DNA of 64,000 bases from Styela clava (lineage: Eukaryota): NCBI RefSeq assembly GCF_964204865.1, contig NC_135263.1, positions 5,704,001 to 5,768,000 of the forward strand. The letters are read 5' to 3'. Positions 10,600 to 54,152 of the stretch are shown one piece after another. Every line of letters starts with the position of its first letter. Position 1 is the stretch's first letter. The notes below the pieces were generated by a model. That model did no database searches and was not told the DNA's origin. It was given only the letters and a program-made list of their open reading frames with translations. The position numbers and the translations under genes are program-made.

Positions 10600-11238
10600 T
10601 TAAGCAAAATATTTCCAAATGAGAAACATGAAAATTGTTGTAAGTATCATTCCACCGAAGAGAACAAATTTATCCTGAGTCGTTCGTTTTTCAATCAAAC
10701 GCATGACAGTGTTCGACATTCCGAGAGTGTTGGCAATATTTAGCATTTTGGTTTTGATTCCTTTTAAAGATCCACGCTGGTTTCGTAAATTTTCTATCAC
10801 GCTACTGCCATGACTTATGAGATCATCCATTCCCTTATGAGCACCTTGTAATTTATGATGGTGATTTAAGCTGGCATCCATCTGTATTGAAGTATCGGCG
10901 TCATTCGTAGTAAATTTAGTTTCCATTAATAATTCTCTTTCTCTTTGCTGCTGATTTCTCACATATCTTCTATGTTGAAAATTACGCAAAGCAGATTGTA
11001 AATGTTGACAATCATATTTGACTTGATCGACCTTTAACCTCGCATTTTGCCGCCTCGTCGGATGTTCTTTGTTTACCAAAATATCCAGCCTGTCACAATT
11101 ACCAACAATTTGATCGATGCGAGCTTGTAATTCATTTTCAATGACGTGGATGTCTTCATCTCGTGCCGTTTCTAATCGTCCCATATTTTGTTGGATCTCA
11201 TGAACCATTTTATTGGTTTGATGATATAGATTCTCCAT
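10600..11238 (-). CDS. GOSR2: Golgi SNAP receptor complex member 2 (membrin/Bos1), intronless CDS, 212 aa
   Basis: MENLYHQTNK...ARLKVDQVKYDCQHLQSAL...LNIANTLGMSNTVMRLIEKR followed by a C-terminal TM helix. The true start is probably Met21 of the track ORF (11238), which directly follows a pyrimidine tract and AG (TTTGTTTAAG|ATG). Confidence 0.95.
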   Translation of the reverse strand: MENLYHQTNKMVHEIQQNMGRLETARDEDIHVIENELQARIDQIVGNCDRLDILVNKEHPTRRQNARLKVDQVKYDCQHLQSALRNFQHRRYVRNQQQRERELLMETKFTTNDADTSIQMDASLNHHHKLQGAHKGMDDLISHGSSVIENLRNQRGSLKGIKTKMLNIANTLGMSNTVMRLIEKRTTQDKFVLFGGMILTTIFMFLIWKYFA

Positions 11239-12453
11239 CTTAAACAAATATAAAATAAATATAGGAGCTAAAATACTGGAAACAGAAAAAGATTTCATAT
11301 ATCAGTATATAGGCAAGTCAATAAGGCAAATAAACATTTTTCCATTTCTCAAATTTCTAAATTCACTGATTGTGGTGATGTCTTTTGGGTCTGATACAAA
11401 AATAATTCGGCGATTCAACATGTTGATTCAGCTTAGTGAAAACTAGAACAACTCCTTATTACAGTATTATATTGTAAAGCAAAAAAATGTGATATGAAAT
11501 TTTCATGTTTTTGAAAAAAAGGGTGATCTGGCGGAATGAAATTCAGCGTTAAATTAAATCATACCCATCCAATTTTAAACTAAGCAGGTCGTGCAAAATA
11601 GGATATCAATAGCCTTCCGTACAAGACAAACTTATCTTTAAAAACTCAAAATTTGGGCTGTATATTTTACATTACATTTTTGTTTTGCGTTATTTACGCT
11701 GTCACAGAATTTATTTTCACAATTCATTTTTGTTTGCTGTCATTTAACTACTTACGGCCTGTACTTCGCTAGACCCCATTAATTCGCTACACATTAATTT
11801 AAACTCGTGACATAGAATATTAGTGAAAAAATATCAAGCTACTCTCTAAATGGCTTTATAAAGTTAAAGAAAAAATTATGTCCCCAAGCTTTGCAGAGAT
11901 GAGTTTATTGAAAACTAAACCCAACATGTTTTTGTTATGACTTCAGAACTTAGGTTATAAAACAATGAGCGCTCGGAAAATACGGTTAGTAATAAAGATA
12001 AAATATTATCACGCCTATTTGTATATATATATTTATATATACGAAAAAATATATATACAATGTAAGTTTAGCATCTAATATAGCAATTTCAAACTGTGAC
12101 TGCCCCCTACGCTAACCAGTAAAAGACAGGCTAGCCGTAAGCGAAGCCCCAGGCTTGACGTGTCCAATATTAATAAATTTAATCTCATTTTATCTCTGCA
12201 CTCAGAAACTATTCGAGCGTATTGAAATAGGAAAGCACATGTGAGAATATAAAAGAAACATAAAGAGAAACAAAGACGAGAGAGACAAGATTAAAGAGAG
12301 AAACGCCATTTTTTTAAAGGGCTAACGAAAGTAAACATTCGTTGAAATTCAAGAACCGGCGGGGTCGTTCGGAATATGTTCTTGTGGATTTCTTTTAGTG
12401 AACGGTATCTCTGTTCAGTGAGACGATAGGTATTCGTCTATAATTAATGAAAG

Positions 12454-13695
12454 ATGGATCGATTGAGCAAAAAAATATTACAGAAAAATAGGCTTTTATT
12501 GGCACGATCATTGGACATCAGCGAACTCTTGCAATATCTGGTTCAAGAAGGAATTTTAAGCGATAGAATGGTTGAAAAAATCGAATCGAAATGCACGACT
12601 TTTGGTAAAAATGTCGCCTTTTTAAATATATTACCCACGAGAGGACCCCTGGCATTTGAAAAATTAGTAACTGGTTTAAAAGAGACGCAACAGGACTATT
12701 TAGCGGAGGCTCTGCAGTTTGACGAAGGTCCCCGAGATGAAAACTCGAACCTGCTCGAAGGACGCGACAGGACAGATACGAAATTCCACGCAAAAGAAAA
12801 TATTTTGACCTCAATGGAAAATCCCATAGACTCTCATGATGGTCCTAGCAATTTGTTGGTCGAAAAGTCCACACTAGAATTCTATCGGGGAAACTACAAC
12901 CGGGGATATAAGATGACGTCACGACCGAGAGGATATGCGCTTATCATAAATGTGACTGAATTCGACAACGGAGTTGATCTCCCGCAAAGACAAGGAGGAA
13001 ATTTAGATAAAGAAAATCTTGGATCCGTTTTACATCATTTAGGATTCGAAACACTTCTTGTGGAAAATCGTACTGCCTCAGAGATAAGCAGCTCTCTGGA
13101 GACGTTTGCGCGCAATGAAAATCATAAATCACGCGACGCTTGCGTCGTCGCCCTCCTTACCCACGGACAAGAGGGAGTTGTCTATGGCCGCGATGGGAAA
13201 ACACTAGTGATTGAAGATATAATATCCCTTTTCGACAATGCTAATTGTCCGAATTTACGGAACAAACCTAAAATATTCTTTGTACAAGCGTGTCGAGGGG
13301 ATCTCTATGACAGGGGAATCGATGAGATCGACGGAGGCGCAAAGATCAGAAAATCTCGGTGCACAACGTCGACGTTTGATTACAGCTTTGACGAACCTCG
13401 TCTTCCTACACGATCGGACATGCTATTTGGATATGCAACTCAGCGAGGGCAAGCGGCAATGCGCAACACTCATCATGGAAGTTGGTACATCGAAGCACTT
13501 GTAAAAGTGTTAGCGAAAAACGCCAAGAACCACGATCTTGCAGAAATGCTGACATCGGTAAATAGCGTCATCAAAGGAATGCAGTGTCACTCGCCTGGAT
13601 CGGACCTTCACAATTGCAAGGAAATGCCCATATTCCACAGCACCTTATGCAAGAAATTGTATTTATTCCCTGGAATATTTCAGAATAAAAAATGA
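12454..13695 (+). CDS. CASP2: Caspase-2 (CARD + p20/p10), intronless, 413 aa
   Basis: CARD (KNRLLLARSL..SELL..LNILPTRGP), DSHDGP prodomain site, LLTHG catalytic His, QACRG catalytic Cys, linker DRGIDEIDG, RLPTRSDM, AAMRNT..GSWYIEAL and LYLFPG. These are caspase-2-type motifs. Confidence 0.93.
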   Translation: MDRLSKKILQKNRLLLARSLDISELLQYLVQEGILSDRMVEKIESKCTTFGKNVAFLNILPTRGPLAFEKLVTGLKETQQDYLAEALQFDEGPRDENSNLLEGRDRTDTKFHAKENILTSMENPIDSHDGPSNLLVEKSTLEFYRGNYNRGYKMTSRPRGYALIINVTEFDNGVDLPQRQGGNLDKENLGSVLHHLGFETLLVENRTASEISSSLETFARNENHKSRDACVVALLTHGQEGVVYGRDGKTLVIEDIISLFDNANCPNLRNKPKIFFVQACRGDLYDRGIDEIDGGAKIRKSRCTTSTFDYSFDEPRLPTRSDMLFGYATQRGQAAMRNTHHGSWYIEALVKVLAKNAKNHDLAEMLTSVNSVIKGMQCHSPGSDLHNCKEMPIFHSTLCKKLYLFPGIFQNKK

Positions 13696-31844: not shown

Positions 31845-33110
31845 TCACATTTTCAACTTTCTTTCTCTATATAAGTAGGAATCATAGTAAAAAACTGCAA
31901 TAGACAATGAACCGAGAAATATAGAAAAAGCATTTGGAGCTGAGAAAGATAATTCTTGTAGAATGCCATTAGCCAGAGGCGCTCCAAACCTGGCCACGGA
32001 TAACACTGATGATCCAAGGCCTTGTATGTGTCCAATGTCACAACTTTCTGAATATTTCACAGTCAAAACCACACCACAAACTCGAAGTACTGAGGTACCC
32101 ATAGTAAGGGTTGTCATGGCTACTAGAATCACAGATATTTTCGAAGAAATTAAAAATAGAATAAAAGATAGCAAAACTAAACAACTTGCATGCATTTGCA
32201 ATTTCTCTTCATGGCCTTTGTAATATGCTAAATTCGACACAGTGCCAACTAAAAACCCAAAAAATAACCCAAGAAACCCATTATACGAGACAATATATCC
32301 AACTGTAGTTGAGGCTAAATCAGGGTGATAATGGGTTAACCATAAAACAAACGTTGAACGAAACATCAAAACTGGCAAGGCAAGCAAAAAACGAGAAGCA
32401 AAAACCCCTCTCTGGAAGCGTTTGAGGTCATCAGTTATATTTTCTACATTTGCTGTGTTTTCGGTAACACCGTTTTCGTGATTAAATCCATTTTTGTGTG
32501 ATTTTTCTGTTGGCATGGGTTTATATAACTCATGATTTGGATAAAATCTTAAAATTGACACAACTAAAAAATTTAGTAAAAAAAGAGAAGCACAAATCAT
32601 ATAACTAATGTAGAGTCCATAAGTATGGCCAAAATTCGCAACCAAATGTCCATGAACAGTGGGTCCAATAATAAATCCAATGCTTGCAATTGCATTAAAA
32701 CTTCCTATTGCCTGATTTTTGTTATGACCGGACTCTTCAATTAAGCAACATCTGCATAAATCTTGTGTGTGCTTAAAAATACCAGGAATTATCCTTAGCA
32801 ATGCCAAGCTGACCAATGATGAAACAAAAAATCCAGAAAAGAGATATCCAGTAGAAGAAATTATTAGGCAAGCTGAAATGGCATTTAAACGTCCTCTGGA
32901 ATCGCTCCATTTTCCAACCAAAGGACTTGAAAACAATTGTAGTGCTCCATAAATAGATGTTATGGCCCCTGTCAGGGTCGAAGAAGCTCCAAACGATTTT
33001 ATATGAACGGGAAACGCTGGAACGACGAGACTTACGGCAAGCATGTCTAAAAATCCAATCAAATATAGAAGGAAATGCCGAGCCTGTAGGTTTCTATTTT
33101 TCTTCGTCAT
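31845..33110 (-). CDS. MFSD9: MFS transporter MFSD9, intronless, 421 aa
   Basis: LYLIGFLDMLAVSLVVP...YGALQLFSSPLVGKWSDSRGR (MFS motif A), GIFKHT, FNAIASIGFIIGP; about 12 hydrophobic segments. Confidence 0.9.
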   Translation of the reverse strand: MTKKNRNLQARHFLLYLIGFLDMLAVSLVVPAFPVHIKSFGASSTLTGAITSIYGALQLFSSPLVGKWSDSRGRLNAISACLIISSTGYLFSGFFVSSLVSLALLRIIPGIFKHTQDLCRCCLIEESGHNKNQAIGSFNAIASIGFIIGPTVHGHLVANFGHTYGLYISYMICASLFLLNFLVVSILRFYPNHELYKPMPTEKSHKNGFNHENGVTENTANVENITDDLKRFQRGVFASRFLLALPVLMFRSTFVLWLTHYHPDLASTTVGYIVSYNGFLGLFFGFLVGTVSNLAYYKGHEEKLQMHASCLVLLSFILFLISSKISVILVAMTTLTMGTSVLRVCGVVLTVKYSESCDIGHIQGLGSSVLSVARFGAPLANGILQELSFSAPNAFSIFLGSLSIAVFYYDSYLYRERKLKM

Positions 33111-33527: not shown

Positions 33528-34262
33528 GCTGATATATCCGATGTCAGATCTTCACTTTTGTTAGATTACCGTGCAAGATTAAAGATTATACAATACAATT
33601 TTATTTTGATCTTTCGTCTACAACGTGATAACACAGAACGCAAAATAAAAGCACAGACAAGGGCGACGAAAAGATCGGGAAAATGGACAAAACCTCGAGA
33701 AAGGTTTATAGCAAACGCTGCAAGCGTTTGTGCCCATTTACCCTCACTCACACAGATTCATTCAAATAGCTCATAAGTCTGTAAGTGAGCGTGTGCTTTG
33801 TTCACGACGGGGATATCGCTCATGTCAGCGTGTGTACTCCTCAAAATCCTTACAGAGTTGAAGAAGTCATTTAATGCAGCAATGCCTGTTTTCCCCATTT
33901 TGCCATCAATATTGGGATGCTTTGTGGAAGATTGAATCAATCTTATTTAGGTACCTATTGCAGTATTGTTCTGCGAATTAACTTCCTGAATCAGTAAATA
34001 CACATACAGACACACATAGCTGACATAGAGCTATTGATCACCTCCAGACCTTACAGAATGTTTAAGAAATACGGTATGTTAAACTTCTCCACTACTACAA
34101 AAAAGCAAAATGTTAACATTACAGAATTATGTTCCTTGTGTGGACTTGATAGTGTTTAATTTTTTTTAAGATGCTGCTTGAGTACAATGTAAAATCATGT
34201 CTATAAATTTGATTTCTTTTTCTCAACTTTTAGCCCATAACGTAAAATTAGGATATAAAACA

Positions 34263-34742
34263 ATGGCAGGAAATCCAGCTAGATCTGCACAACTCTCTCA
34301 TACAACGCAAAATCTACTAAAATCATACAAAAGCAGATTACAGGATGACATCCGAACCATGTATGAGAACTTCAACGAAATTATACGATCTGCAAAAATA
34401 GCAACAGATGAAAAACAACTCGTACAAAAAGAATCGCAAGGCTATTTTGACGTTTACCAAATGAAAGTACGAGCTGCAAATATTGTTCGCGCAGGAGAAT
34501 CATTACTAAAACTCATATCAGATCTCAAAACTTTTGTCATTTTGAACGATTTCCCAAGTATAAATGAACAATTAAATCAACAGAATCAAGCATTGAAAAA
34601 CACTGGTGATCTTTTACAACAGAAGATTATTGAAATGAGAGATGAATTTTCTTCTGCTATGATAGATCTTGAAAATGAATATTATAATTCATTAAGAATT
34701 CCAGTTCGTAAGCCCACAAATCACAGCTCTTCTATGCAATGA
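34263..34742 (+). CDS. MED22: Mediator subunit 22 (Surf5), single coding exon, 159 aa
   Basis: LLKSYKSRLQDDI..ENFNEII..AKI...YQMKVRAANIVRAGESLLKLISDLKTFVILNDFPSINE...LENEYY. Start placed at 34263, after the acceptor TTTTAG (34232-34233). Confidence 0.93.
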   Translation: MAGNPARSAQLSHTTQNLLKSYKSRLQDDIRTMYENFNEIIRSAKIATDEKQLVQKESQGYFDVYQMKVRAANIVRAGESLLKLISDLKTFVILNDFPSINEQLNQQNQALKNTGDLLQQKIIEMRDEFSSAMIDLENEYYNSLRIPVRKPTNHSSSMQ

Positions 34743-35834: not shown

Positions 35835-39966
<4,132 letters not shown>

Positions 39967-44113: not shown

Positions 44114-46580
44114 AATGGTTATTATAGAATCTTTTTCGTAGCGGTACTTTGTACACTTTTAGGCTATAGTAAAAGTATAAGTAAGAATCAGCGTGTTCTA
44201 TTTTCTACGTCTTGCTTCAAAACTAAAATAAGGTAATTGACTTTGGAAAAGTTAAATACATCAAAACGTATTTGCATATCTTTAGGAATCCAGACGTAAT
44301 TTAACTAAATCTGCTATGAACTTTGGAGAAATAGTAAAACCAACAAAACACATTTGAATACATCGTACCTCTTCACCCAGCCATGATGCAATTGCAAATG
44401 CAAAGTTTATTGATTTCAGTGTCTAAAGTACTCCAATGTGTAGTAGTTGTTCGTGATACGATTCCAATGTCTTATGAGGTAGCGTCTAACTCTAAGATGT
44501 ACGGTTTCTCATGTCACAACAAAAGTATATGGCAGAGTTGCCCGCTTGAGCAATGAAGTCAAATTGAATTTTACTCTACATTACATTTGGTATTGAAGGC
44601 AATATTAATATCATTTTTACAAATTTGTTGTTATACGAATATTGTCTCATCTCTTGACCAAACCCGGATTTGACTATCATAGTATTCAAATATTTTTTAA
44701 ATAGCACACTTCCGGCAATTTATAGAAAACGATTAAGGTTAATGTTGCCCGTATATAAATATTCAATTTTGTTACGTAATATATCATTATATGGCAGTGG
44801 TTCTCAACCGGGGGCCGATGGCCCCCTAAGGGGGCCACGAAGCAGTTCAAGAGGAGCCACGACACAAGACCAATAATAGATCATAAAGCAACTTAGTTTG
44901 CATACTTTTATTTTAAAATAAAATCTCCCGTTCAGGCGTTCACCGCAGTTTCATTACATGAATAGGTTATTTGCGATTTCAGGGTGAATTCACTTTCCCA
45001 TACGTGAATTGTTTCAACATATTGCCCACAATACGAAAATGGAACGACAGTCGCATTGGCGTTGGCTTCACCAAAGTAAATTGAGATGACAGAGTGAATG
45101 TAGCTATGAAGTGGCATTTCGTATTCTTAGTGCAACGGTACGACTTAACCGGAATACCGGTAGGTGCTCGCCACTAATACAGTCTAGTAATACTGTAATA
45201 ATTAGTTCAGAAGGTCCAATGTGCTGCAAAGACACACAAATAGGTTCGAAGTTCACGATGCAAACGAAGAGACTATCAAAATAGTGTAAAATCCACGCTT
45301 AAAGCAGATAAAATAAGAGCGACAAAATACGGTCCTTACCCAAAGCGTATATATAATACGCTTCTCGACCTCACCTATGTGCCAAATTTGTTTATATTCC
45401 CTTGTGATTTTATGTTGGGTTTTTATTCAAACTAAAAATCTTTTTTTTTCTTCTCCTTGTTCGGATATTCGCTTCTAAAATAAATATTAAAAAAATGTGA
45501 ATTTGTAAAAAGATGTGAAAATTATACTCTCTTTTACAGAATTTTAAACAAATCAAGTTAAATCAGCCAGGGAAACAAGCAGACAGAAGATACTTCAGCA
45601 AAACGCAAATTGAAAAAATACAGTGTTGACAAAGTGTCAATTCTACAAAAATCAGACAAAGAAAGTCTGGTTCAAAGTATGTGAACAAGTTTAGACAATC
45701 CATATTTTTTCCAGTGAAAAGATTTTGCAAAAAGAAATCTAGATTTGAAACAATCATATTTATATTTGCATTTGGGAGATGCACACAGTCTTGCAATACT
45801 CCACGTAAAATATATTTTATGGTGATAAGAAAACAGCGCCATCTTGAGTACATAAATAAATTTTATTGGTGTTTGTTCAGAATACCTCGCATTGTTAGGC
45901 GTTCGCAGTTTACAAAACACAGTTTTATACCTGATAATGCCAAGTATGCGCTTTGAAAAGATTATTAACGTATACGTCATTTGAATCAAAACTTATTGAC
46001 GAAGTGTTAATAGTTGCACAGAAAATTGCATTCCCTACATGAGGAATAAATTTGAGATGTGATTTTATCAATAAATATGTTAAAAATGCATGATAAATAA
46101 AACTTTTTAGTATCTTGAGCGTATTATTTTCTATTTTCTAATTCATACGAGCTCTGGAATAACGAGATGAAATAGTGAAAAAAAAGATCTGAATTTTAGG
46201 AAAATATTTGGAATTGTGTAAGCAAGCGACAGCGCAAGGAAATAAACGAATTATACCGATCACTATAATCAAGGTAGGTTGCTTTGTGGATAATATGATT
46301 ATTATACTAAAGTATAAAGTAATACTGCATTTCTGAGTTATTCATATATATTAATTATTAATATATATATATAGCAAAATGAGCCAAATAAAAATAGTAA
46401 AAACGATAGGAGCCAAAACTATCTGTAACTGCAGCACAAAGATTTTTTTTCGCGTGCTCAACTCGAGGGTGTGATGTAGGTTTGGCTCCATTATCAGTCA
46501 TCTTTTAAAATAACAATCTTGACTTTACAGCATTAATATAGATTGACAATACTTTCGATTGTACACGAATTGTAAACAAT

Positions 46581-46720
46581 GGAAATTCCCAAATCGTTCT
46601 TAAAGGAGATTAAATCTTCAGATTGCGGTTTACTCAATTTTCTACGTAAAAGTTGGCTACCATGGTTGCCATATTCCAATAAAAATTAAAAAACGCTTAT
46701 GGCAAATCGTATTTATAAAG
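46581..46720 (+). promoter_or_regulatory. Promoter of cystine-knot gene A: NF-kB-type site and TATA box
   Basis: GGAAATTCCC (reverse complement GGGAATTTCC, canonical kB site) at 46581-46590; TATAAA at ~46714-46719; ATG at 46766. Confidence 0.6.
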
Positions 46721-46765
46721 CTTCCGTGGTAAATATCACCATTTTGCTTTTGAGCTGCCGATGAA

Positions 46766-47992
46766 ATGAAACGGTTTATTCATTTTCTTGTCTGGCTGTG
46801 TGTTGGCCCAGCCTTCTGCTCGGCGGGAGGTCCACCAAGACGGGATAAAGCGCCACCACCACCACCACCAGAATGCCAACTTAAAAGACCACCGTAAGTG
46901 AACTGCGATTGCTTATATTTTTTAAGCGTAGTTATATTTTTATAATATTGTAATTATAATTTCTTGGTAATCTAATTCACCCATATCCGTTTCAATGTAA
47001 GTCAAATTGTCATTAATACGAATTCGTTTATATATATATAGAAAAGTCGTTTAAAAAAAAATTAAACAAGAGGTCCTGTCATATAATTATTTTTGATTCA
47101 TTTCACCTTTTTCTAAATATTTTCTATAAATTATTTTAGATTGAACAATCCGGATCCCTGTCCCATGCATGTCTATTGGGAACACAGATGTTTGCCTCCG
47201 AAACCATGTTTATTTACAATTAAGAAAGGGATTGTAAGAGAAAAAGGCGTGAAACATTACGTGAAACTGTCTCTTCCAGTAACACACTTATCTCGAGAAT
47301 GCAAGTATGTGGAATATCTGATTTATTGAATGAAATTTCAAAAGTTGCATGTTAGTAAATATTCTTCGATGTTACAATTTTAATAAGACAGCTGAAAAAT
47401 CTACGTTACATATTTAAAGTATAATTTCACATCACACAAATTCGTTACACTCGCAGAAAATTAAATTGTATTAATCTAATTTTATTTTCAGAAAATATGG
47501 CAAAATATGCAGTCCTGGAAAAAAATATTGCACATGCCAGCACAAGGGAGAGTGGGTTAAGATAAAGGCTTGGGTACTTTGGAAAAAGAACAATTTTCAT
47601 ATTTCTGCTCTCAAAAAAGTTGAAGCGCTAGTAAGTTAATGACAGGGGCAAAGCCTGACAAGATTGATTAAAATTATCCTGGCAGATATTGTAATGGCTT
47701 CTGTTTTCAAAATAGAGTTTGCTTGCAACATTGGTCTTAAAAATGGCTATTCAATGTATCACTAATAAATACTTCGCCATGTAATAAATCACTGTCAACG
47801 GAAACCGAATTCGATTGCAACAGAAGCCACTTATCATACATGTGATATAATACTAAGATTTAATACTTTATCTGAGACTTATGAGACTTATCTGAGCTTA
47901 TCCATTCACATTTCATTTCTTTTAATATTATTTTATAGGTCCCGGGTGGATGTATGTGTGCAAGGAGAAACATAGTATCTTTCGTACCATAA
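46766..47992 (+). CDS. Secreted cystine-knot-like protein A, 4 exons, 161 aa
   Basis: Exons 46766-46893, 47140-47304, 47492-47630 and 47939-47992 (phases 2,2,0) give MKRFIHFLVWLCVGPAFCSAGGPPRRDKAPPPPPPECQLKRPPLNNPDPCPMHVYWEHRCLPPKPCLFTIKKGIVREKGVKHYVKLSLPVTHLSRECKKYGKICSPGKKYCTCQHKGEWVKIKAWVLWKKNNFHISALKKVEALVPGGCMCARRNIVSFVP*. AATAAA at ~48045. Confidence 0.88.
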
Positions 47993-48823
47993 TATCTTTT
48001 TTATCGTAAATCATATTATGGAAAAAGCGATTTATCAAGTTGACAATAAATAAATTGCTATCGATGCATTTTTATTATTTATGCCATTCATGTGGATCAG
48101 TATTCAATTTGGGGAATTTCGCACCATTTTATTAGAAATGATGAAGAGTTCATATCAGTAAAGTTATCACATCACGACTGCGACGATATTTCCGTGATAT
48201 ATGATTTATTCAGACAGCTGAAACTTAAATACAATTCAAAACTAGATACAGAATTCAAAGTATAAATGCAACATGTCGTAGAAACGAAGGACATGAATAA
48301 CGAATAGCGTATTGAGTTATCCTTATCATTTTGAAATTGCGCGGTTAATAGTTAGGGTTCTCCACTGAACAAATCATCAACCCAAACAACCCCCTCTCAA
48401 GATCAAATTTGCCGAACTTGGAAGATTACTAATCTTCTGAATACATAGAAGCTGAGATGTGCACTTGTTAAAAAAAAAAACGGAAAAAAAAATTTAGATC
48501 ACAACATTAATAATTAAATATATATAGGGGGTAAAACGTTTTAAATATAACTAAAATTGCCAATGTGTTTAGCTATGAATGGGACACAAGCCATGCACCC
48601 TTTTGTGGAGTAAAGAATTGTATAAAGCGTCTAGTTTTTCAGATGAAAAAAATTAATAAAGTTGAAAATAAAGACTAGCACTGAATAAACTTCTTTTATG
48701 TAAAATCATCAATAGAGCAATCATCCAATGCTTGGGTACTTCTTCTTCAAGAAAGAGTTCCCTAAGAGAGAGTAGTTTGTGCGTTAGACTAATGTGTGGG
48801 GTGGTGCCGAGTCAGCTAGAGTC

Positions 48824-49119
48824 CAGTGGTTCCCAACCTTTTTTAAAACACTTAAATTTTGTCAAAAAATAAATTTCGTAAAATCTCGCACCGAGGATAT
48901 GCTCAAATACTAAAAGGCATGTAGTGCTTCTATTGCCGCAAAATTAAATTATAAATACAAAAAAAAATCTACAATATTATTAAGCAACATTTCAGTATCA
49001 AATACAAAATAAACAAAAAAATCCACTAGAAAATAAAATCACCTTTATGTTTAGATTGAAAAACAAAACAATAACGAGCAATCCAGTTTTCGGTCGCGAC
49101 CCGAAGGTTCGGGAAAATG
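48824..49119. mobile_element. Degenerate Charlie-type MITE between the two cystine-knot genes
   Basis: Left end CAGTGGTTCCCAACCTT; decayed right end CGCGACCCGAAGGTTCGGGAAAATG; no clean TSD. Confidence 0.5.
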
Positions 49120-50431
49120 AATTAGTCCATTTTACTCTACTAGGGTGATTATGCGCATGTGGGTTTCTTGACTCATGTTATTCTTTTCGTTTAATTATTC
49201 AAATAACCAAACTTAGCTTACAAAAATTCATATTGAACAAATAGGAAATAATTTTCCCTAATCCCCAGCCGAAGACGTGGGTTTCAATTAAATGACGACA
49301 TACCTAAAGACATCATTTGATATTAAACTGGTTAAAAAGTTGTGCACAGTTTTCGACTACAGCGCCGTCAAAATAGCATTTTGGCGTACTCTTATTTCTT
49401 TACGCAGCTGATAGCTTATTTAAAATTCATAATATGTTAGGATAAGTTTAATAGGTTTAAATTGGCCATAAACTGTGGCATTCAAAAATAATGACTATTG
49501 GTGAACTTTTCATCATTTTGTAATGACACATAACGATCTATCTATATATACAAGCAATGTATACACAGCAACAAAAGTGGCAGAGATAAATACAGTTTTA
49601 GCGAAATACAGAATATAAAAACGATAGCTTTTGTCTGCATTTGCTTTGTAAAAAATACAAGAAAATTTGAAATCAGGAAATTATTATTTTAAGCATACAT
49701 TTTTAGGTGAAAATAACGCATGAGTTTTATAATGAGGAATATTTTTGAACGTAGATACGTAGATAAAGACATAGTTTGTTTGATGCTAATCAATAGAAAC
49801 TTCCTTCTGGATATATATTGCATATTTAAGCAGTACAGGAAAATATATTTGCAAGCATCATCTTTATTTAAATAATAGTCATGGTTTCAGGAAATCTTAA
49901 AATGCTAAAAAAAATGATCTTATTGTGCGAAAATGGCGAAACTAAAGAATAAAATGGTGGAACGATATCGGCTTTAAAAGAATAACAGTATTAGTGAAAT
50001 TTTGGGTTTGCGCAAGGCAGTTCTTGGATCAGCGAACTAGTTCTTAATTTTTGTTTTGTCCCTGTTCTGAAATCTGTTGATAGCGAGTTTTACAAAAAAA
50101 AAAAATGTTTTCAAAATTTCGAATCCCACCACTCACTGACGGGGATATCATCAGAAATACTATTGTGACAAAACAAGTTGAATGGGCGAAATATACATGG
50201 CTGTGCTTTTAAAGTTTTTCGTTATTTGAATACGGTTAACACGGATAATTTACCAAATTACTGTTCTGGTTTTTACCAATACGACCATTATCTAGAATAG
50301 ATAATAAAATAAATGTGTGCCGTATACTGGAGTGAAAAAAATATTTAACTAAAATTATTAAAATCGAAACCGCGTGGCATTTGTTTTAGTTTTAATTTAG
50401 CATGCGTTAACAGCAATGCCGCAAGCAAAGA

Positions 50432-50577
50432 TTCCCGGAATATATTCCTCCGATCAAATGAACGTTGCAGTATTATCGCATGTCAGCAGCAATTGTCATA
50501 ACATTGGAAATTCCCATTCTTCCATTAATTCTACTTATAATACCGCTCCATCTGTAACAAGTACAAGTGTTATAAAG
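50432..50577 (+). promoter_or_regulatory. Promoter of cystine-knot gene B: STAT-type GAS site, NF-kB-type site, TATA
   Basis: TTCCCGGAA at 50432-50440, GGAAATTCCC at 50506-50515, TATAAA at ~50571-50576; ATG at 50706. Confidence 0.6.
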
Positions 50578-50705
50578 ATGTTCCCGAAATTGTTTTTCAG
50601 CCTTTAACAATCGTGACGAAAATAGGTTTTTGTGGTTTTTTAAGAATTTATATAATCTGGGTTATGACTGCCGAAGTCATCAGTTGCTGAATTTGCTGCG
50701 TTACA

Positions 50706-51890
50706 ATGAAATTTGCAGTTTTTTGTATTGTACTTGTTTGTGTGACTGCGGGTTGGTCTGTGCCGCCTGACGAACCCAAAGACGTGCCCCCCCTGCCTGT
50801 TCTTCCGCCGTGCAAACTCAAAAATCCACCGTGAGTATATACTGTCAAAAATATTGGCACCTAATATTTTGTCTTTCTAATATTTATGAATATTTTATAT
50901 TTGTAATGAAATTTTGCTTCAGATGGAAAAATCCAGAACTTTGTAGAGAAAAGAAAAAGTCTAAATGTTCTCCGAGAACTTGCCTCTTTACAATAAAGAA
51001 GGGATACATTTACATAAATCAAAAAAAGGTGGAGGTTAAAGTTACGAAACCGAAAACCATAAAAGTTGTTGAGTGTCGGTAGGTTAAATCCATGTATTGT
51101 GATATTACCTACATATGTGAATGAAGGTAGAGAATAATTCATGAATTGGTAACTCGGTACTTAGGATTGGCCAACGGTATTTCGACATGATTTTATCACT
51201 TCCATTTATGACTGGCCTTATCTGTCAACCTTTTGATAAAGGTTGATCTTGATTTTTACCCAATCCAGGTGTAATTAATCGGACAGAACGAACCGCAGAC
51301 AATTTAGATAAATCTAATGGCAAAAATATTCTACTACTAGAGAAAAGATGGAATTAAATGACTTAAATATGCCGAAAAATGTTTTGATTAATTAATCGAC
51401 ATCGCTATATTATTCGTACAAATATTTGATAATATACGAAAGAGTGCTACTTTATAGAATGTAATTAAATTATTTTTCAAAATATATGAATAAAAATAAT
51501 TACAGGAACTATCTGAATAAATGCAGCAACGAGATTTCCTTCCCATGTAGATGCAAATATATGGGGAAAAGAATCTTTGAAGACTTGTATATCGCAAAGA
51601 AAATTGAAGGAAAATGGAAATCTGTTAAAACTTGGGTTCAAGTCAATGTAAGTCTTGTGAATGTCATCATTTCAATGCAGATTTCGTAACAAATATAAAG
51701 TCCATTAATGGCTTAAGCAGTGCACATTTTGACGCAATTAAAAACAACACAAATATCTAGACAAAATGTAATAACTTCACAAACTTAATATAAATTGATT
51801 AATTTGAATTGTATAACTGAAAATAATATTTCCTTATCATAGATTCCTGGTGGATGCAGATGTGCCGAAGCGAACAGAATTATAACATAG
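50706..51890 (+). CDS. Secreted cystine-knot-like protein B (paralogue of A), 4 exons, 156 aa
   Basis: Exons 50706-50830, 50923-51078, 51506-51647 and 51843-51890 (phases 2,2,0) give MKFAVFCIVLVCVTAGWSVPPDEPKDVPPLPVLPPCKLKNPPWKNPELCREKKKSKCSPRTCLFTIKKGYIYINQKKVEVKVTKPKTIKVVECRNYLNKCSNEISFPCRCKYMGKRIFEDLYIAKKIEGKWKSVKTWVQVNIPGGCRCAEANRIIT*. AATAAA at ~51947 and ~51967. Confidence 0.88.
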
Positions 51891-53198
51891 CGTCATAGAT
51901 GGAGCACCGGACGCACGCAGAGAAAATGTCAAAATGATACGCTTAAAATAAAATTATCTCTGCAGCAATAAAGATTCGTTATTTTTGTTTCAAGCTGAAA
52001 CTGTATCAGTAATTAATTAGAGTTTGATATGTTGCCTATTAAAAACGTTGGATGGGTTTTCGCTTAACATATTCAGCAGAAATCCAGTTTTCTGTTAATT
52101 TGTCGGTAGGTAACGTTGTGCGACGCCTAGCAATAATAAATATAACAAGCTTTAATATTTTCAATATCTACAATTACATCATAATCGATAATATACAATT
52201 TTCATACCAATCTGAATATATTGGATGCCATCTGAAGTACTTCACGAATCACGAATTTGGGGTTTCATGTTGCAGTTGTTAGAAAATGTTGTTTCATAGA
52301 TCGAGTGCTGTTATGCTGGAGAAACCAGGATCACAATAAGCGATGTCAAGTGATCCAACCACCTATTTCAAATTCGTATATTTATTTTCAAAATGCTCTC
52401 CTAATACATTCGCGCACATATATTGTTTAGGATTAGGATTTAGTTCAAGTATAAAAATAGAGGCCAATGCGATGCGTTTCTAATTTCCAAGGTATAAAAT
52501 TTATAGGCAAATTATAGCAAACAAAACACACCAAAAGTATTATATTTATGTAGTGCGCATCGTCACACTCTCTCAAATTATTAGACAGACATAGCCTAAG
52601 ATTTATAGTTATAACCGAATTGAATCCCTCCGTCAAACAAATCAAGTCATTTTTATTTTCTGCGTGTTTAATACAAAGATAAAGTATATTTTGCAATGTT
52701 CTTAAAATTTGATCAAAATGACATTTACAAAAATATATTTCCTCAAATCATATGTTATAATATAGAAAGTCATAATCGTTTTATTAAAATGATGACAGAA
52801 AATATAATCTCACCTGTCGGATAAAAGCTTTCCAGTAACCCTTTCATAAACTTCTGTAGCAATCTTAAAAGCTTAGCAGGATCTTGCCAAGCCCAAAGCG
52901 TATATATAATATAATGTTGTTCTTACCCAGCGACAGCAGAAGCAAGAAGGACGAAGGGTGCGAACTGCAGCCTGTTCACATATGCAGTGGTGGTTGGAGT
53001 CGAGTAACTGAAACCAACTGTCGGGCGAATTAGGGCTCAGACTCCACACACCAATGCATATGCAATAACCAGACAAGAAATATAAATAAAATAATACACA
53101 ATAAAAAATAGTACAACTCCAGTCCCGCCACATTAGCCACTACATAGCATGAAAGCTTCTTCACTGATAGTAGGCCTATGACTTGCCACAACCCATCT

Positions 53199-53340
53199 GG
53201 CTTTTCTGATCTTGTCACCATCAAAACAAAATCTAAAAACCGTTTTGATGTTGACAGTGACATTCGTCTCTGGCTGTATCAAAGACTGTGCCCCATATAA
53301 GAAACCTTGCAAGGCAGTCCCAATTGCAAGATTCCCATTG
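53199..53340 (+). pseudogene. Frameshifted C-terminus of a Buster/Charlie (ZBED5/FAM200-like) hAT transposase
   Basis: GFSDLVTIKTKSKNRFDVDSDIRL / AVSKTVPHIRNLARQSQLQDSH* matches the family dimerisation-domain tail GFS.L..IKTK.RNRL....D.R.ALS...P.I..L....Q.Q.SH. Confidence 0.85.
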
Positions 53341-54152
53341 ATTGTATATATACTAAAAAGCTTGGACTTCTTTTTGTCTCTATATAGTTTGAGTTTTCTT
53401 GGATGGTGAACAGGGGAGCCACGAGTGCAATAAGGCGCCAGAAGGGGGCCACGAGCCATAAAAGATTGGGAACCACTGTTATATGGCATCCATTGGTGAG
53501 GATGTGCAGACGTAGAGTAACGCATAAATCCGTTGCATACACTTATTTACAAGCAGGTAATATTGACGAACAAATTTTGAATGACAGAAACTAAAAAAAT
53601 TATTTACACAACAATAATTACTTAACGCACGCACACACACACACAAACACACAATCGGGAGTGTAAAAAGCGAGACCTAAAATAAATTACTCTGTAAGAA
53701 GAAAAATATACAAACAAATAAAAAAACAATGAATAAATCCTTTTGCCACACCAAATTAATAATATTATGAGGATTGCTGAATTGGATACCGAATTAGTCA
53801 AAAAGAGTTATGTACTGTGGATAGAAAATAAATATTCCTAAAAAAACATCGTCAAGCTGATTTTAATTGGAGTCACCTAATGCCGAATTGCCCAATCCGA
53901 ATTGCCAGGTTGAATGCATGGAGAGGTGGGCTAGACTTGCTTCACTCACCAGATAGAAGAAAAACCTATCCAAATTAACTCCAAATTATTTTAAATACTA
54001 TTATTCAATAAAAGTGCCGGTAATTAAAATTAAGTAAGACACTGTAACACAGCCATGTTGCTGCTTCATCGTTAAGTTTTGTTCAAGATACCCTATTTCA
54101 GTGAATTTATGATAAAATATTTCATACATATTAATTATTATATACGTTTCAG

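What the first reader, a model, noticed from the sequence alone, without database searches (positions are those of the whole stretch)
46766..51890. Candidate new family of secreted, basic, 10-cysteine cystine-knot ligands
Seen: both proteins have a signal peptide, a Pro-rich spacer and all 10 mature Cys aligned, with shared motifs CxLKxPP, NP.xC, CLFTIKKG, EC, CS, CxC and (V/I)PGGCxCA. They have identical intron positions and are Lys-rich. Established: the spacing C...EC-x(5-6)-C...C...P/VxxCxC at the C-terminus is that of growth-factor cystine knots (Spaetzle PSCCKC, IL-17 VGCTC, PTTH/trunk VACLC). Unlike IL-17, where two knot Cys are Ser, these appear to keep all six plus four extra. I do not recognise an orthologue. 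Inference: tunicate cytokines, possibly Spaetzle-like Toll ligands or heterodimer partners; a cationic antimicrobial or clotting role is an alternative.
Basis: partly seen in the sequence, partly recalled or inferred. Interest (0 to 1): 0.85.

Follow-up and report, generated by a model that had tools for sequence, protein, structure and literature searches.

The report
Sea-squirt orphan cystine-knot-like secreted proteins
Two neighbouring, expressed genes of the sea squirt Styela clava encode small, secreted, very basic proteins with ten conserved cysteines. They belong to a roughly 15-copy family found only in this species so far, and they probably fold like nerve growth factor or Spätzle, though no sequence method can place them in a named family.

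Summary
Two four-exon genes on the + strand (A 46766-47992, 161 aa; B 50706-51890, 156 aa) share intron phases 2,2,0. They are 33% identical, and all 10 mature cysteines and every quoted motif align. All six introns appear as GT..AG joints in contigs of runs guessed to be RNA.

The organism is Styela clava, and RefSeq calls both proteins "uncharacterized". I found about 13 more family loci in a cluster on contig C19 and none elsewhere in the genome. No homologue turned up outside S. clava, and there was no Pfam or PDB sequence match.

Four weak but concordant lines favour a neurotrophin/Spätzle-like cystine-knot fold:
- the cysteine spacing;
- two long beta-hairpins in low-confidence AlphaFold models;
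- best structural matches almost all to neurotrophins and other knot growth factors (Z at most 3.7);
- language-model neighbours in NGF/Spaetzle/IL17/Noggin clusters.

Membership of IL-17, NGF or Spätzle was tested and not met.

A is under purifying selection (dN/dS 0.06) and B evolves fast (about 1.2). A conserved NF-kB-type site sits about 180-200 bp upstream of the start codon of A, B and their C19 twins. The pair lies inside a hAT-like element with an 8-bp target duplication.

The scan has already reported other NGF-fold orphan families on other DNA of this genome.

The parts
46766..46893 (+). Gene A exon 1: start codon, signal-like segment, Pro-rich spacer, Cys1 (CQLKRPP)
   Evidence: (joint 46893>47140)
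47140..47304 (+). Gene A exon 2: Cys2-Cys5, CLFTIKKG, first predicted long beta-hairpin
47492..47630 (+). Gene A exon 3: Cys6, the CxC pair (Cys7, Cys8), second predicted long beta-hairpin
   Evidence: (joints 47304>47492 and 47630>47939)
47939..47992 (+). Gene A exon 4: VPGGCMCA (Cys9, Cys10) and stop codon
50706..50830 (+). Gene B exon 1: start codon, signal-like segment, Pro-rich spacer, Cys1 (CKLKNPP)
   Evidence: joint 50830>50923; X1 contig with no mismatches
50923..51078 (+). Gene B exon 2: Cys2-Cys5, CLFTIKKG, first predicted hairpin
51506..51647 (+). Gene B exon 3: Cys6, the CxC pair, second predicted hairpin
51843..51890 (+). Gene B exon 4: IPGGCRCA (Cys9, Cys10) and stop codon
46581..46590 (+). 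NF-kB/Rel-type decamer GGAAATTCCC, 185 bp upstream of the ATG of A
   Evidence: two matches in the 64 kb, 0.07 expected; also conserved in A' and B'.
50506..50515 (+). The same decamer, 200 bp upstream of the ATG of B, inside the only block that aligns between the A and B promoters
44795..53478 (.). hAT-like non-autonomous element that holds both genes. Terminal inverted repeats begin CAGTGGTTC. The 8-bp target duplication TTATATGG lies at 44787-44794 and 53479-53486. The arms (44795-45130 and 53133-53478) lie directly side by side in solo copies of about 685 bp elsewhere in the genome.
   Evidence: No ORF of 130 aa or more with a Pfam match lies inside.
45361..52878 (+). Block homologous (75-90% DNA identity) to C19:12505520-12514488, which carries the twins A' and B' at the head of the family cluster

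Best explanation
A and B are two expressed members of a Styela-restricted family of about 15 loci. They encode small secreted, strongly cationic proteins.

After signal-peptide removal and a short Pro-rich N-terminus, the ten cysteines most likely build a neurotrophin/Spätzle-type cystine-knot module. Cys4 sits at the start of hairpin 1. Cys5, Cys6 and the Cys7-x-Cys8 pair lie between the hairpins. Cys9-x-Cys10 follows hairpin 2. That would give knot pairs 4-7/8, 5-9 and 6-10, plus two extra disulfides that tie down the N-terminal part.

By analogy with that fold class, the proteins would act as dimeric extracellular ligands. The conserved Rel/NF-kB-type promoter site suggests they are switched on in immune or injury responses. 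A is conserved, and B diversifies while keeping the scaffold.

Shown:
- the gene structure, the splicing and that they are transcribed;
- that the two genes are paralogues, and the size of the family;
- the cysteine conservation and the charge;
- the selection asymmetry between A and B;
- the promoter motif;
- the hAT context.

Inferred:
- secretion;
- the fold and the disulfide map;
- dimerisation;
- ligand function and NF-kB control.
For: - Gene models and homology between A and B.
- Spliced contigs for all six introns.
- RefSeq identity.
- Family members with exactly 10 mature Cys, pI 9.5-10 and net charge +12 to +20.
- AlphaFold2 secondary structure shows two long hairpins. They span 66-94 and 119-146 in A. 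In B they span 61-91 and 116-141, with block pLDDT 72-86.
- Foldseek on model A: about 44 of the 50 listed hits are cystine-knot growth factors, with BDNF/NT3 first.
- VIA search of 48,161 chains: the top four for A are proNGF, NGF, sclerostin and PDGF-B. For B only three chains reach Z 2, and the top two are proNGF and VEGF-C.
- VIA second look: ranks 1-19 are all neurotrophins, aligning model residues about 59-160 to nearly the whole chain.
- ESM Atlas: the nearest clusters for both proteins carry NGF, Spaetzle, IL17 or Noggin domains. Scores are 0.90 with 182 shared features for A and 0.94 with 210 for B.
- dN/dS is 0.06 for A/A'. It is 1.2 for B/B', with all Cys kept.
- The kB-type decamer is conserved upstream of A, A', B and B'.
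Against: - The models are poor: mean pLDDT 47 and 54, and below 50 around the cysteine cluster.
- All structural matches are below significance: Foldseek E at least 0.29, VIA Z at most 3.7.
- The ESM recognition values (1846 and 2173) are under the tool's 2300 mark, so those scores count as weak evidence.
- No Pfam match for any of seven members.
- No PDB sequence match, even with a family profile.
- hhalign against 12 S. clava IL-17 domains gives 2.6% probability.
- No coordinates were available, so no disulfide could be checked.
- No receptor, dimer or induction data. Whether the runs are RNA is the tool's guess.
Confidence: 0.5

Rival explanations
1. Direct cationic effector. The proteins act on microbes or on haemolymph themselves rather than through a receptor, as antimicrobial, opsonising or clot-forming proteins. 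Horseshoe-crab coagulogen has an NGF-like knot too. This reading is compatible with the same fold.
For: - Net charge +12 to +20, pI 9.5-10 and 14-18% Lys in every member.
- Multi-copy tandem family.
- Fast evolution of B.
- kB-type promoter site.
- From established knowledge: many NF-kB-driven invertebrate effectors are cationic and cysteine-rich.
Against: - At about 135-140 mature residues with two long hairpins, they are larger than typical cysteine-rich antimicrobial peptides.
- A is under strong purifying selection over its whole length (dN/dS 0.06), which fits a specific partner better than membrane attack.
- No activity data exist.
Confidence: 0.25
2. A different disulfide-rich beta fold with an unrelated role, such as gamete recognition, tunic or adhesive material, or a toxin. 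The growth-factor-like appearance would be an artefact of low-confidence models of a hairpin-rich protein.
For: - Every fold-level signal is sub-threshold.
- There is no sequence link to any knot family.
- dN/dS near 1.2 in B is also typical of reproductive proteins.
- The Lys- and Pro-rich composition recalls some adhesive proteins; this is from memory and is a lead only.
Against: - Independent methods converge on the same superfamily: 3Di search, a full VIA scan and language-model features.
- Two Cys-free stretches of 30-37 residues, flanked by clustered cysteines that end in CxC, are not what compact small disulfide-rich folds look like.
- The conserved kB-type site does not suggest a structural or gamete protein.
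Confidence: 0.2
3. A divergent IL-17 family member, that is, an unusually complete-knot IL-17 retained in a tunicate.
For: - The C-terminal I-x-G-C-x-C tail is shared with S. clava IL-17 domains. It is the only segment hhalign aligns.
- IL17-carrying clusters are among the ESM neighbours.
- S. clava has at least 32 IL-17 loci and at least 5 SEFIR loci.
- PMC11087794 describes complete-knot (T1A) IL-17s in other phyla.
Against: - The Pfam IL17 model matches none of seven members at E up to 10. At genome scale it hits 32 other loci above cut-off (a 33rd below it) but not these.
- The hhalign probability is 2.6%.
- The IL-17 hallmark CxCxGC is absent.
- The IL-17 domain lies in one open frame at the 12 S. 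clava loci examined, whereas here the module spans three exons.
- The structural matches favour neurotrophins, and no IL-17 chain is listed.
Confidence: 0.05

Closest known systems
Neurotrophins (NGF, BDNF, NT3, NT4; Pfam PF00243)
   Same: - Small, secreted and basic.
- One cysteine before a long hairpin, three cysteine positions between the hairpins, and CxC after the second hairpin.
- They give the best, though weak, structural matches, covering nearly the whole neurotrophin chain.
   Different: - No sequence or profile similarity.
- Ten cysteines instead of six.
- No long pro-domain.
- The knot ring would close over C-x6-C rather than C-x9-C. The neurotrophin spacing is quoted from memory.
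Spätzle and coagulogen (Pfam PF16077), invertebrate NGF-like knot proteins
   Same: - Secreted knot-type proteins tied to NF-kB immunity or clotting.
- Spaetzle-carrying clusters are among the nearest ESM neighbours.
- Lineage-specific, multi-copy and fast-evolving.
   Different: - No PF16077 match anywhere in the genome (the tool warns that this search rang nowhere).
- A and B have no pro-domain and no activating cleavage site. Only the C-type members have RxRR, just after the signal peptide.
- Even number of cysteines, so no obvious inter-chain disulfide.
IL-17 family (Pfam PF06083), abundant in S. clava
   Same: - The C-terminal GCxC on the last strand.
- Secreted directly, without a pro-domain.
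- Tandem gene clusters.
   Different: - Not recognised by the IL17 HMM or by profile-profile comparison.
- Tunicate IL-17s are reported to lack the 1/4 disulfide (PMC11087794), whereas this family has cysteines at all six knot positions.
- Different exon structure.
Gene-capturing non-autonomous DNA transposons (Pack-MULE-like or hAT transduplication)
   Same: - Terminal inverted repeats and an 8-bp target duplication.
- Arms identical to short solo copies.
- An interior copied from another genomic locus.
   Different: The captured cargo is a complete, intact and transcribed two-gene block with promoters, not gene fragments.

Membership tests
IL-17 (PF06083) | Match to the family HMM at or near the gathering score | tested here: not met
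   No hit at E up to 10 for seven members. The genome-wide six-frame search finds 32 loci above cut-off (a 33rd below it), none on C18:5.75 Mb or C19:12.5 Mb.
IL-17 (PF06083) | Profile-level homology to bona fide IL-17 domains of the same species | tested here: not met
   hhalign of A5 against A6: probability 2.6%, with only 13 columns of the I.GC.C tail aligned.
NGF / neurotrophin (PF00243) | Match to the family HMM | tested here: not met
   No hit. The genome search gives only two sub-threshold hits elsewhere.
NGF / neurotrophin (PF00243) | Structural superposition on solved neurotrophins | tested here: inconclusive
   Neurotrophins rank first, but with Z 2.7-3.7, rmsd 4.3-6.7 Å and 66-90 residues aligned, on models of mean pLDDT 47-54.
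Spätzle (PF16077) | Match to the family HMM | tested here: not met
   No hit for the proteins or in the genome (with the tool's caveat that the search rang nowhere).
Spätzle (PF16077) | Pro-domain removed by an activating protease | tested here: not met
   Cys1 follows the signal-like segment by about 15-17 residues. A and B have no R-x-K/R-R site.
Cystine-knot growth-factor superfamily (structural class) | Two long two-stranded beta-hairpins that leave a cysteine cluster | tested here: met
   DSSP of both AlphaFold models shows strands 66-77/80-94 and 119-130/134-146 in A. In B they are 61-73/76-91 and 116-127/130-141, with block pLDDT 72-86 there. Overall model confidence is low.
Cystine-knot growth-factor superfamily (structural class) | Three disulfides paired 1/4, 2/5 and 3/6, with one threading the ring | not testable with these tools
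   Model coordinates are not returned. The cysteine order and spacing are compatible, but the connectivity is inferred.
Cystine-knot growth-factor superfamily (structural class) | Dimer formation | tested here: inconclusive
   Complex prediction of mature A with mature B scored 0.00, verdict 'no answer'. This is not evidence either way.
hAT-superfamily non-autonomous element | 8-bp target-site duplication and short terminal inverted repeats | tested here: met
   TTATATGG on both sides. The inverted repeats CAGTGGTTCTCAACC and CAGTGGTTCCCAATC agree at 13 of 15 positions. Solo copies have the two arms side by side.
hAT-superfamily non-autonomous element | hAT transposase in an autonomous relative | not tested
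   There is no long ORF with a Pfam match inside this copy. The autonomous partner was not searched for.

The most novel reading that the evidence does not exclude
Styela clava keeps a complete six-cysteine NGF/Spätzle-type knot ligand system, a class reported as missing from tunicates. A would be a conserved subunit and B a diversifying subunit that pair as a heterodimer. They would signal through a TIR- or SEFIR-type receptor in an NF-kB feed-forward loop. The whole two-gene unit, promoters included, was copied to a new chromosome by a hAT element.
Probability: 0.15. Interest if true: 0.8.

Novelty: new variant of a known kind. Interest (0 to 1): 0.6.

Why it matters
The Ciona genome was reported to lack the neurotrophin/Trk/p75NTR system (PMC2772990). 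Tunicate IL-17s are reported to have lost the complete knot (PMC11087794). An expressed tunicate family with cysteines at all six knot positions and a neurotrophin-like predicted shape would be a concrete, testable candidate for a missing or replaced class of ligands in the closest relatives of vertebrates.

The A/B pair also offers a natural contrast: one conserved and one fast-evolving paralogue with a shared promoter element. It is a rare case of an intact, transcribed two-gene block carried inside a DNA transposon.

If the fold prediction fails, these are still an unnamed family of abundant cationic secreted proteins worth an activity test.

Tried and rejected
- **Pfam.** Exon-by-exon and full-length scans gave nothing beyond chance.
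- **PDB sequence searches.** Single proteins and two family profiles gave only spider-toxin noise at E 0.09-0.6 for A.
- **Homologues outside S. clava.** None were found with an exon-2 profile against 1.84 billion representatives, or in three word-seeded searches of 5.8 billion proteins. Other styelid genomes are not in any collection I could reach, so "Styela-only" may reflect sampling.
- **IL-17 membership.** Rejected.
- **Spaetzle and NGF HMMs.** No match in the genome.
- **A/B heterodimer.** Complex prediction scored 0.00, verdict "no answer". The tool did not use the alignments and did not run its controls, so this counts neither way.
- **A weak exon-2-like hit on C1 (L004).** Not a family member.
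- **Literature.** Searches for the LOC and XP identifiers and for Styela cystine-knot proteins found nothing relevant.
Full report
**What is there.** The stretch holds two four-exon genes on the + strand.
- Gene A uses exons 46766-46893, 47140-47304, 47492-47630 and 47939-47992 (161 aa).
- Gene B uses 50706-50830, 50923-51078, 51506-51647 and 51843-51890 (156 aa).
- Every intron is GT..AG, and the phases are 2,2,0 in both genes.
- The proteins align end to end: 33% identity, blastp E 3e-16.
- The mature parts have pI 9.9 and 9.7, 20 and 24 lysines, and no N-glycosylation sequon. Each starts with a hydrophobic segment typical of a signal peptide. Secretion itself is inferred.

**Handling of the spliced models.** The exon-2 profile search returned two database records, P0001 and P0002, which are identical to my local joined translations. 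All later full-length work used those records. No typed joined model was sent to a search tool.

**Organism and annotation.** P0001 and P0002 are XP_039264625.2 (LOC120340436) and XP_039264515.2 (LOC120340344) of Styela clava, both "uncharacterized protein". No paper in the library mentions these identifiers.

**Expression.** Contigs of four public runs from three studies were laid on 46600-52000. They show all six predicted joints with GT..AG ends and nothing in the introns. That these runs are RNA is the tool's guess.
- B contigs in X1 are identical to the window, so B itself is transcribed and spliced as modelled.
- For A, the contigs of X1, X2 and X4 carry the three exon-1 variants that separate A from its twin on contig C19. 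They may therefore be A' or an allele.
- One X3 contig matches A itself across introns 2 and 3.
- The Pro tract (a CCA repeat) varies in length in frame between runs and between RefSeq versions.

**A family, not a pair.** A diverged copy of the whole block lies at C19:12505520-12514488, with 75-90% DNA identity. It holds A' (P0003, 2 amino-acid differences from A) and B' (P0007, 67-68% identical to B).

Downstream on C19, between 12.52 and 12.56 Mb, a three-gene unit is repeated three times. This gives types C, D and E, all with the same four-exon plan. Two weaker matches lie at 12.597-12.600 Mb. That makes about 13 loci on C19 plus the two here. The family profile hits no other contig.

Three of the C19 genes are annotated (P0008, P0009, P0010), again as uncharacterized. 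All seven annotated proteins have exactly ten mature cysteines, pI 9.5-10 and net charge +12 to +20. The D type has an eleventh cysteine in exon 3.

**No named relatives.**
- Pfam gives nothing, by exon or full length.
- PDB sequences give nothing, even with family profiles.
- An exhaustive HMMER pass over 1.84 billion representatives with the exon-2 profile found only A and B.
- Three searches of 5.8 billion proteins found only S. clava members.
- Other styelid proteomes are probably not in these collections, so the taxonomic range is open.

**Fold.** AlphaFold2 with shallow alignments gave poor models: mean pLDDT 47 for A and 54 for B. Both models nevertheless contain two long beta-hairpins. 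In A they span 66-94 and 119-146. In B they span 61-91 and 116-141, where block pLDDT reaches 72-86.

The cysteines sit at the hairpin bases. Cys4 opens hairpin 1. Cys5, Cys6 and Cys7-x-Cys8 lie between the hairpins. Cys9-x-Cys10 closes hairpin 2. This is the order expected for a six-cysteine growth-factor knot, as defined in PMC11087794: two pairs of strands tied by disulfides 1/4, 2/5 and 3/6. Four cysteines remain: the unused member of the Cys7/Cys8 pair and the three N-terminal cysteines.

The structure searches are all below significance but point one way:
- Foldseek on model A lists BDNF/NT3 first, and about 44 of the 50 listed hits are knot growth factors, at E 0.3-3.
- A Foldseek-independent scan of 48,161 chains puts proNGF, NGF, sclerostin and PDGF-B on top for A, at Z 3.4-2.4.
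- For B, proNGF and VEGF-C are the top two of only three chains with Z of 2 or more.
- The second look at Foldseek's own hits ranks 19 neurotrophin entries first, at Z 3.7-2.7. They align residues about 59-160 to nearly the whole chain.
- Foldseek on model B is noisier, but neurotrophins and TGF-beta recur.

The ESM-Atlas feature search places both proteins nearest to clusters that carry NGF, Spaetzle, IL17 or Noggin domains. Scores are 0.90 with 182 shared features for A and 0.94 with 210 for B. The recognition values are below the tool's confidence mark.

I put a neurotrophin/Spätzle-like knot fold at about 0.6. I could not read disulfide connectivity because coordinates are not returned.

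**Membership tests.** S. clava has at least 32 IL-17 loci by the Pfam model, none of them at these places. Their domains carry CxCxGC...GCxC. hhalign between the two family alignments aligns only the I.GC.C tail, at 2.6% probability. The Spaetzle and NGF models match nothing relevant. So this is not a member of IL-17, NGF or Spätzle by any test available, although it may work like them.

The paper PMC11087794 states that complete-knot IL-17 types are lost in tunicates and vertebrates. PMC2772990 states that Ciona lacks the neurotrophin system. That is what gives a complete-knot candidate its interest.

**Evolution.**
- A against A': dS 0.09, dN 0.005, dN/dS 0.06. The coding sequence is 97.7% identical, against 88-91% in introns 1-2.
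- B against B': dS 0.17, dN 0.20, dN/dS about 1.2. The coding sequence is 82.5% identical, lower than the 500 bp upstream (91.8%) and intron 1 (95.7%). All cysteines, the frame and the splice sites are kept.
- I did not test whether the ratio for B exceeds 1 significantly. It fits either diversifying or relaxed selection on a preserved scaffold.

**Regulation.** GGAAATTCCC is the reverse complement of GGGAATTTCC, which fits the Rel/NF-kB consensus GGGRNNYYCC; the consensus is from established knowledge. The decamer occurs exactly twice in the 64 kb, where 0.07 is expected. It lies 185 bp upstream of the ATG of A and 200 bp upstream of the ATG of B. It is also present upstream of A' and B'. It lies in the only block that aligns between the A-type and B-type promoters. 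Function of the site is inferred. No exact copy of the decamer occurs in the fetched loci holding the C, D and E genes; sites with mismatches were looked for only upstream of one C-type gene.

**Genomic context.** The pair sits inside an 8,684-bp element (44795-53478).
- It has inverted termini beginning CAGTGGTTC and a perfect 8-bp target duplication, TTATATGG.
- Its two arms lie directly side by side in many solo copies of about 685 bp elsewhere in the genome.
- Nearly all of the interior (45361-52878) is the copy of the C19 block.
- The wider family cluster is on C19. The simplest reading is therefore that a non-autonomous hAT-like element captured A'/B' with their promoters and moved them to C18.
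- This confirms an earlier first-stage note of this scan.
- The genome has at least three TIR and five SEFIR loci as possible receptor classes.

**Dimer.** Complex prediction on mature A plus B returned "no answer" (0.00), without controls and without using my alignments. It is not evidence either way.

**Relation to earlier scan notes.** Other follow-ups of this scan reported further orphan S. clava families predicted to have NGF/Spätzle folds, on other pieces of the genome. My family profile does not reach other contigs, so this is a separate family at sequence level. Those notes are not independent support.

**Verdict.** The genes are real and expressed. The family is unnamed and lineage-restricted. 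A neurotrophin/Spätzle-like knot ligand is the best-supported reading, but only moderately so. A cationic effector role is the main rival.

Noticed in passing
window 44795-53478 (TSDs 44787-44794 and 53479-53486): A hAT-like non-autonomous element with an 8-bp TSD (TTATATGG) and CAGTGGTTC... termini. It carries the complete, transcribed A/B gene pair copied from the C19 cluster. Solo copies of about 685 bp with the two arms side by side are common elsewhere in the genome, some at spacings of roughly 85-100 kb on C19:5.4-6.6 Mb.
   Followed up: partly
window 46581-46590 and 50506-50515; L006:2683-2692; L007:2604-2613: An identical NF-kB/Rel-type decamer, GGAAATTCCC, lies 176-200 bp upstream of the ATG of A, B, A' and B'. 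It sits in the only promoter block conserved between the A and B types.
   Followed up: partly
G000:C19:12520794-12558320 (L039-L043) and 12597381-12600686: A three-gene unit (types C, D, E of the same family) is repeated three times with a period of about 14-15 kb. The D type has an 11th cysteine (CSGYRCPCRC) and was not among the annotated proteins returned. There are two further weak exon-2-like matches.
   Followed up: partly
window 46852-46853: The CCA (proline) repeat of gene A varies in frame by 3 or 6 bases between transcript contigs and between RefSeq versions (160 against 161 aa).
   Followed up: no
L006 (C19:12507736-12509946): Intron 3 of the twin A' is 2,211 bp, against 308 bp in A. 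It contains a duplicated copy of the end of exon 3 (C19:12507863-12508096).
   Followed up: no
window 48825-48962: A short interspersed repeat between the two genes. Many transcript contigs from all four runs match only this piece and continue into unrelated sequence.
   Followed up: no
window 12454-13695 (+), 31845-33110 (-), 10600-11298 (-), 34197-34742 (+), 38887-39966 (+): Long uninterrupted ORFs with clear Pfam domains: a CARD-caspase, an MFS transporter, a V-SNARE/Sec20-like protein, Med22 and the C-terminal part of SGT1/ecdysoneless. Several look like single-exon genes.
   Followed up: no
G000:C3:14.84-14.87 Mb, C3:2.19-2.23 Mb, C5:15.02-15.08 Mb and others: At least 32 IL-17 domain loci, mostly in tandem clusters. 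At the 12 loci examined the domain lies in a single open frame with the motif CxCxGC...GCxC.
   Followed up: partly
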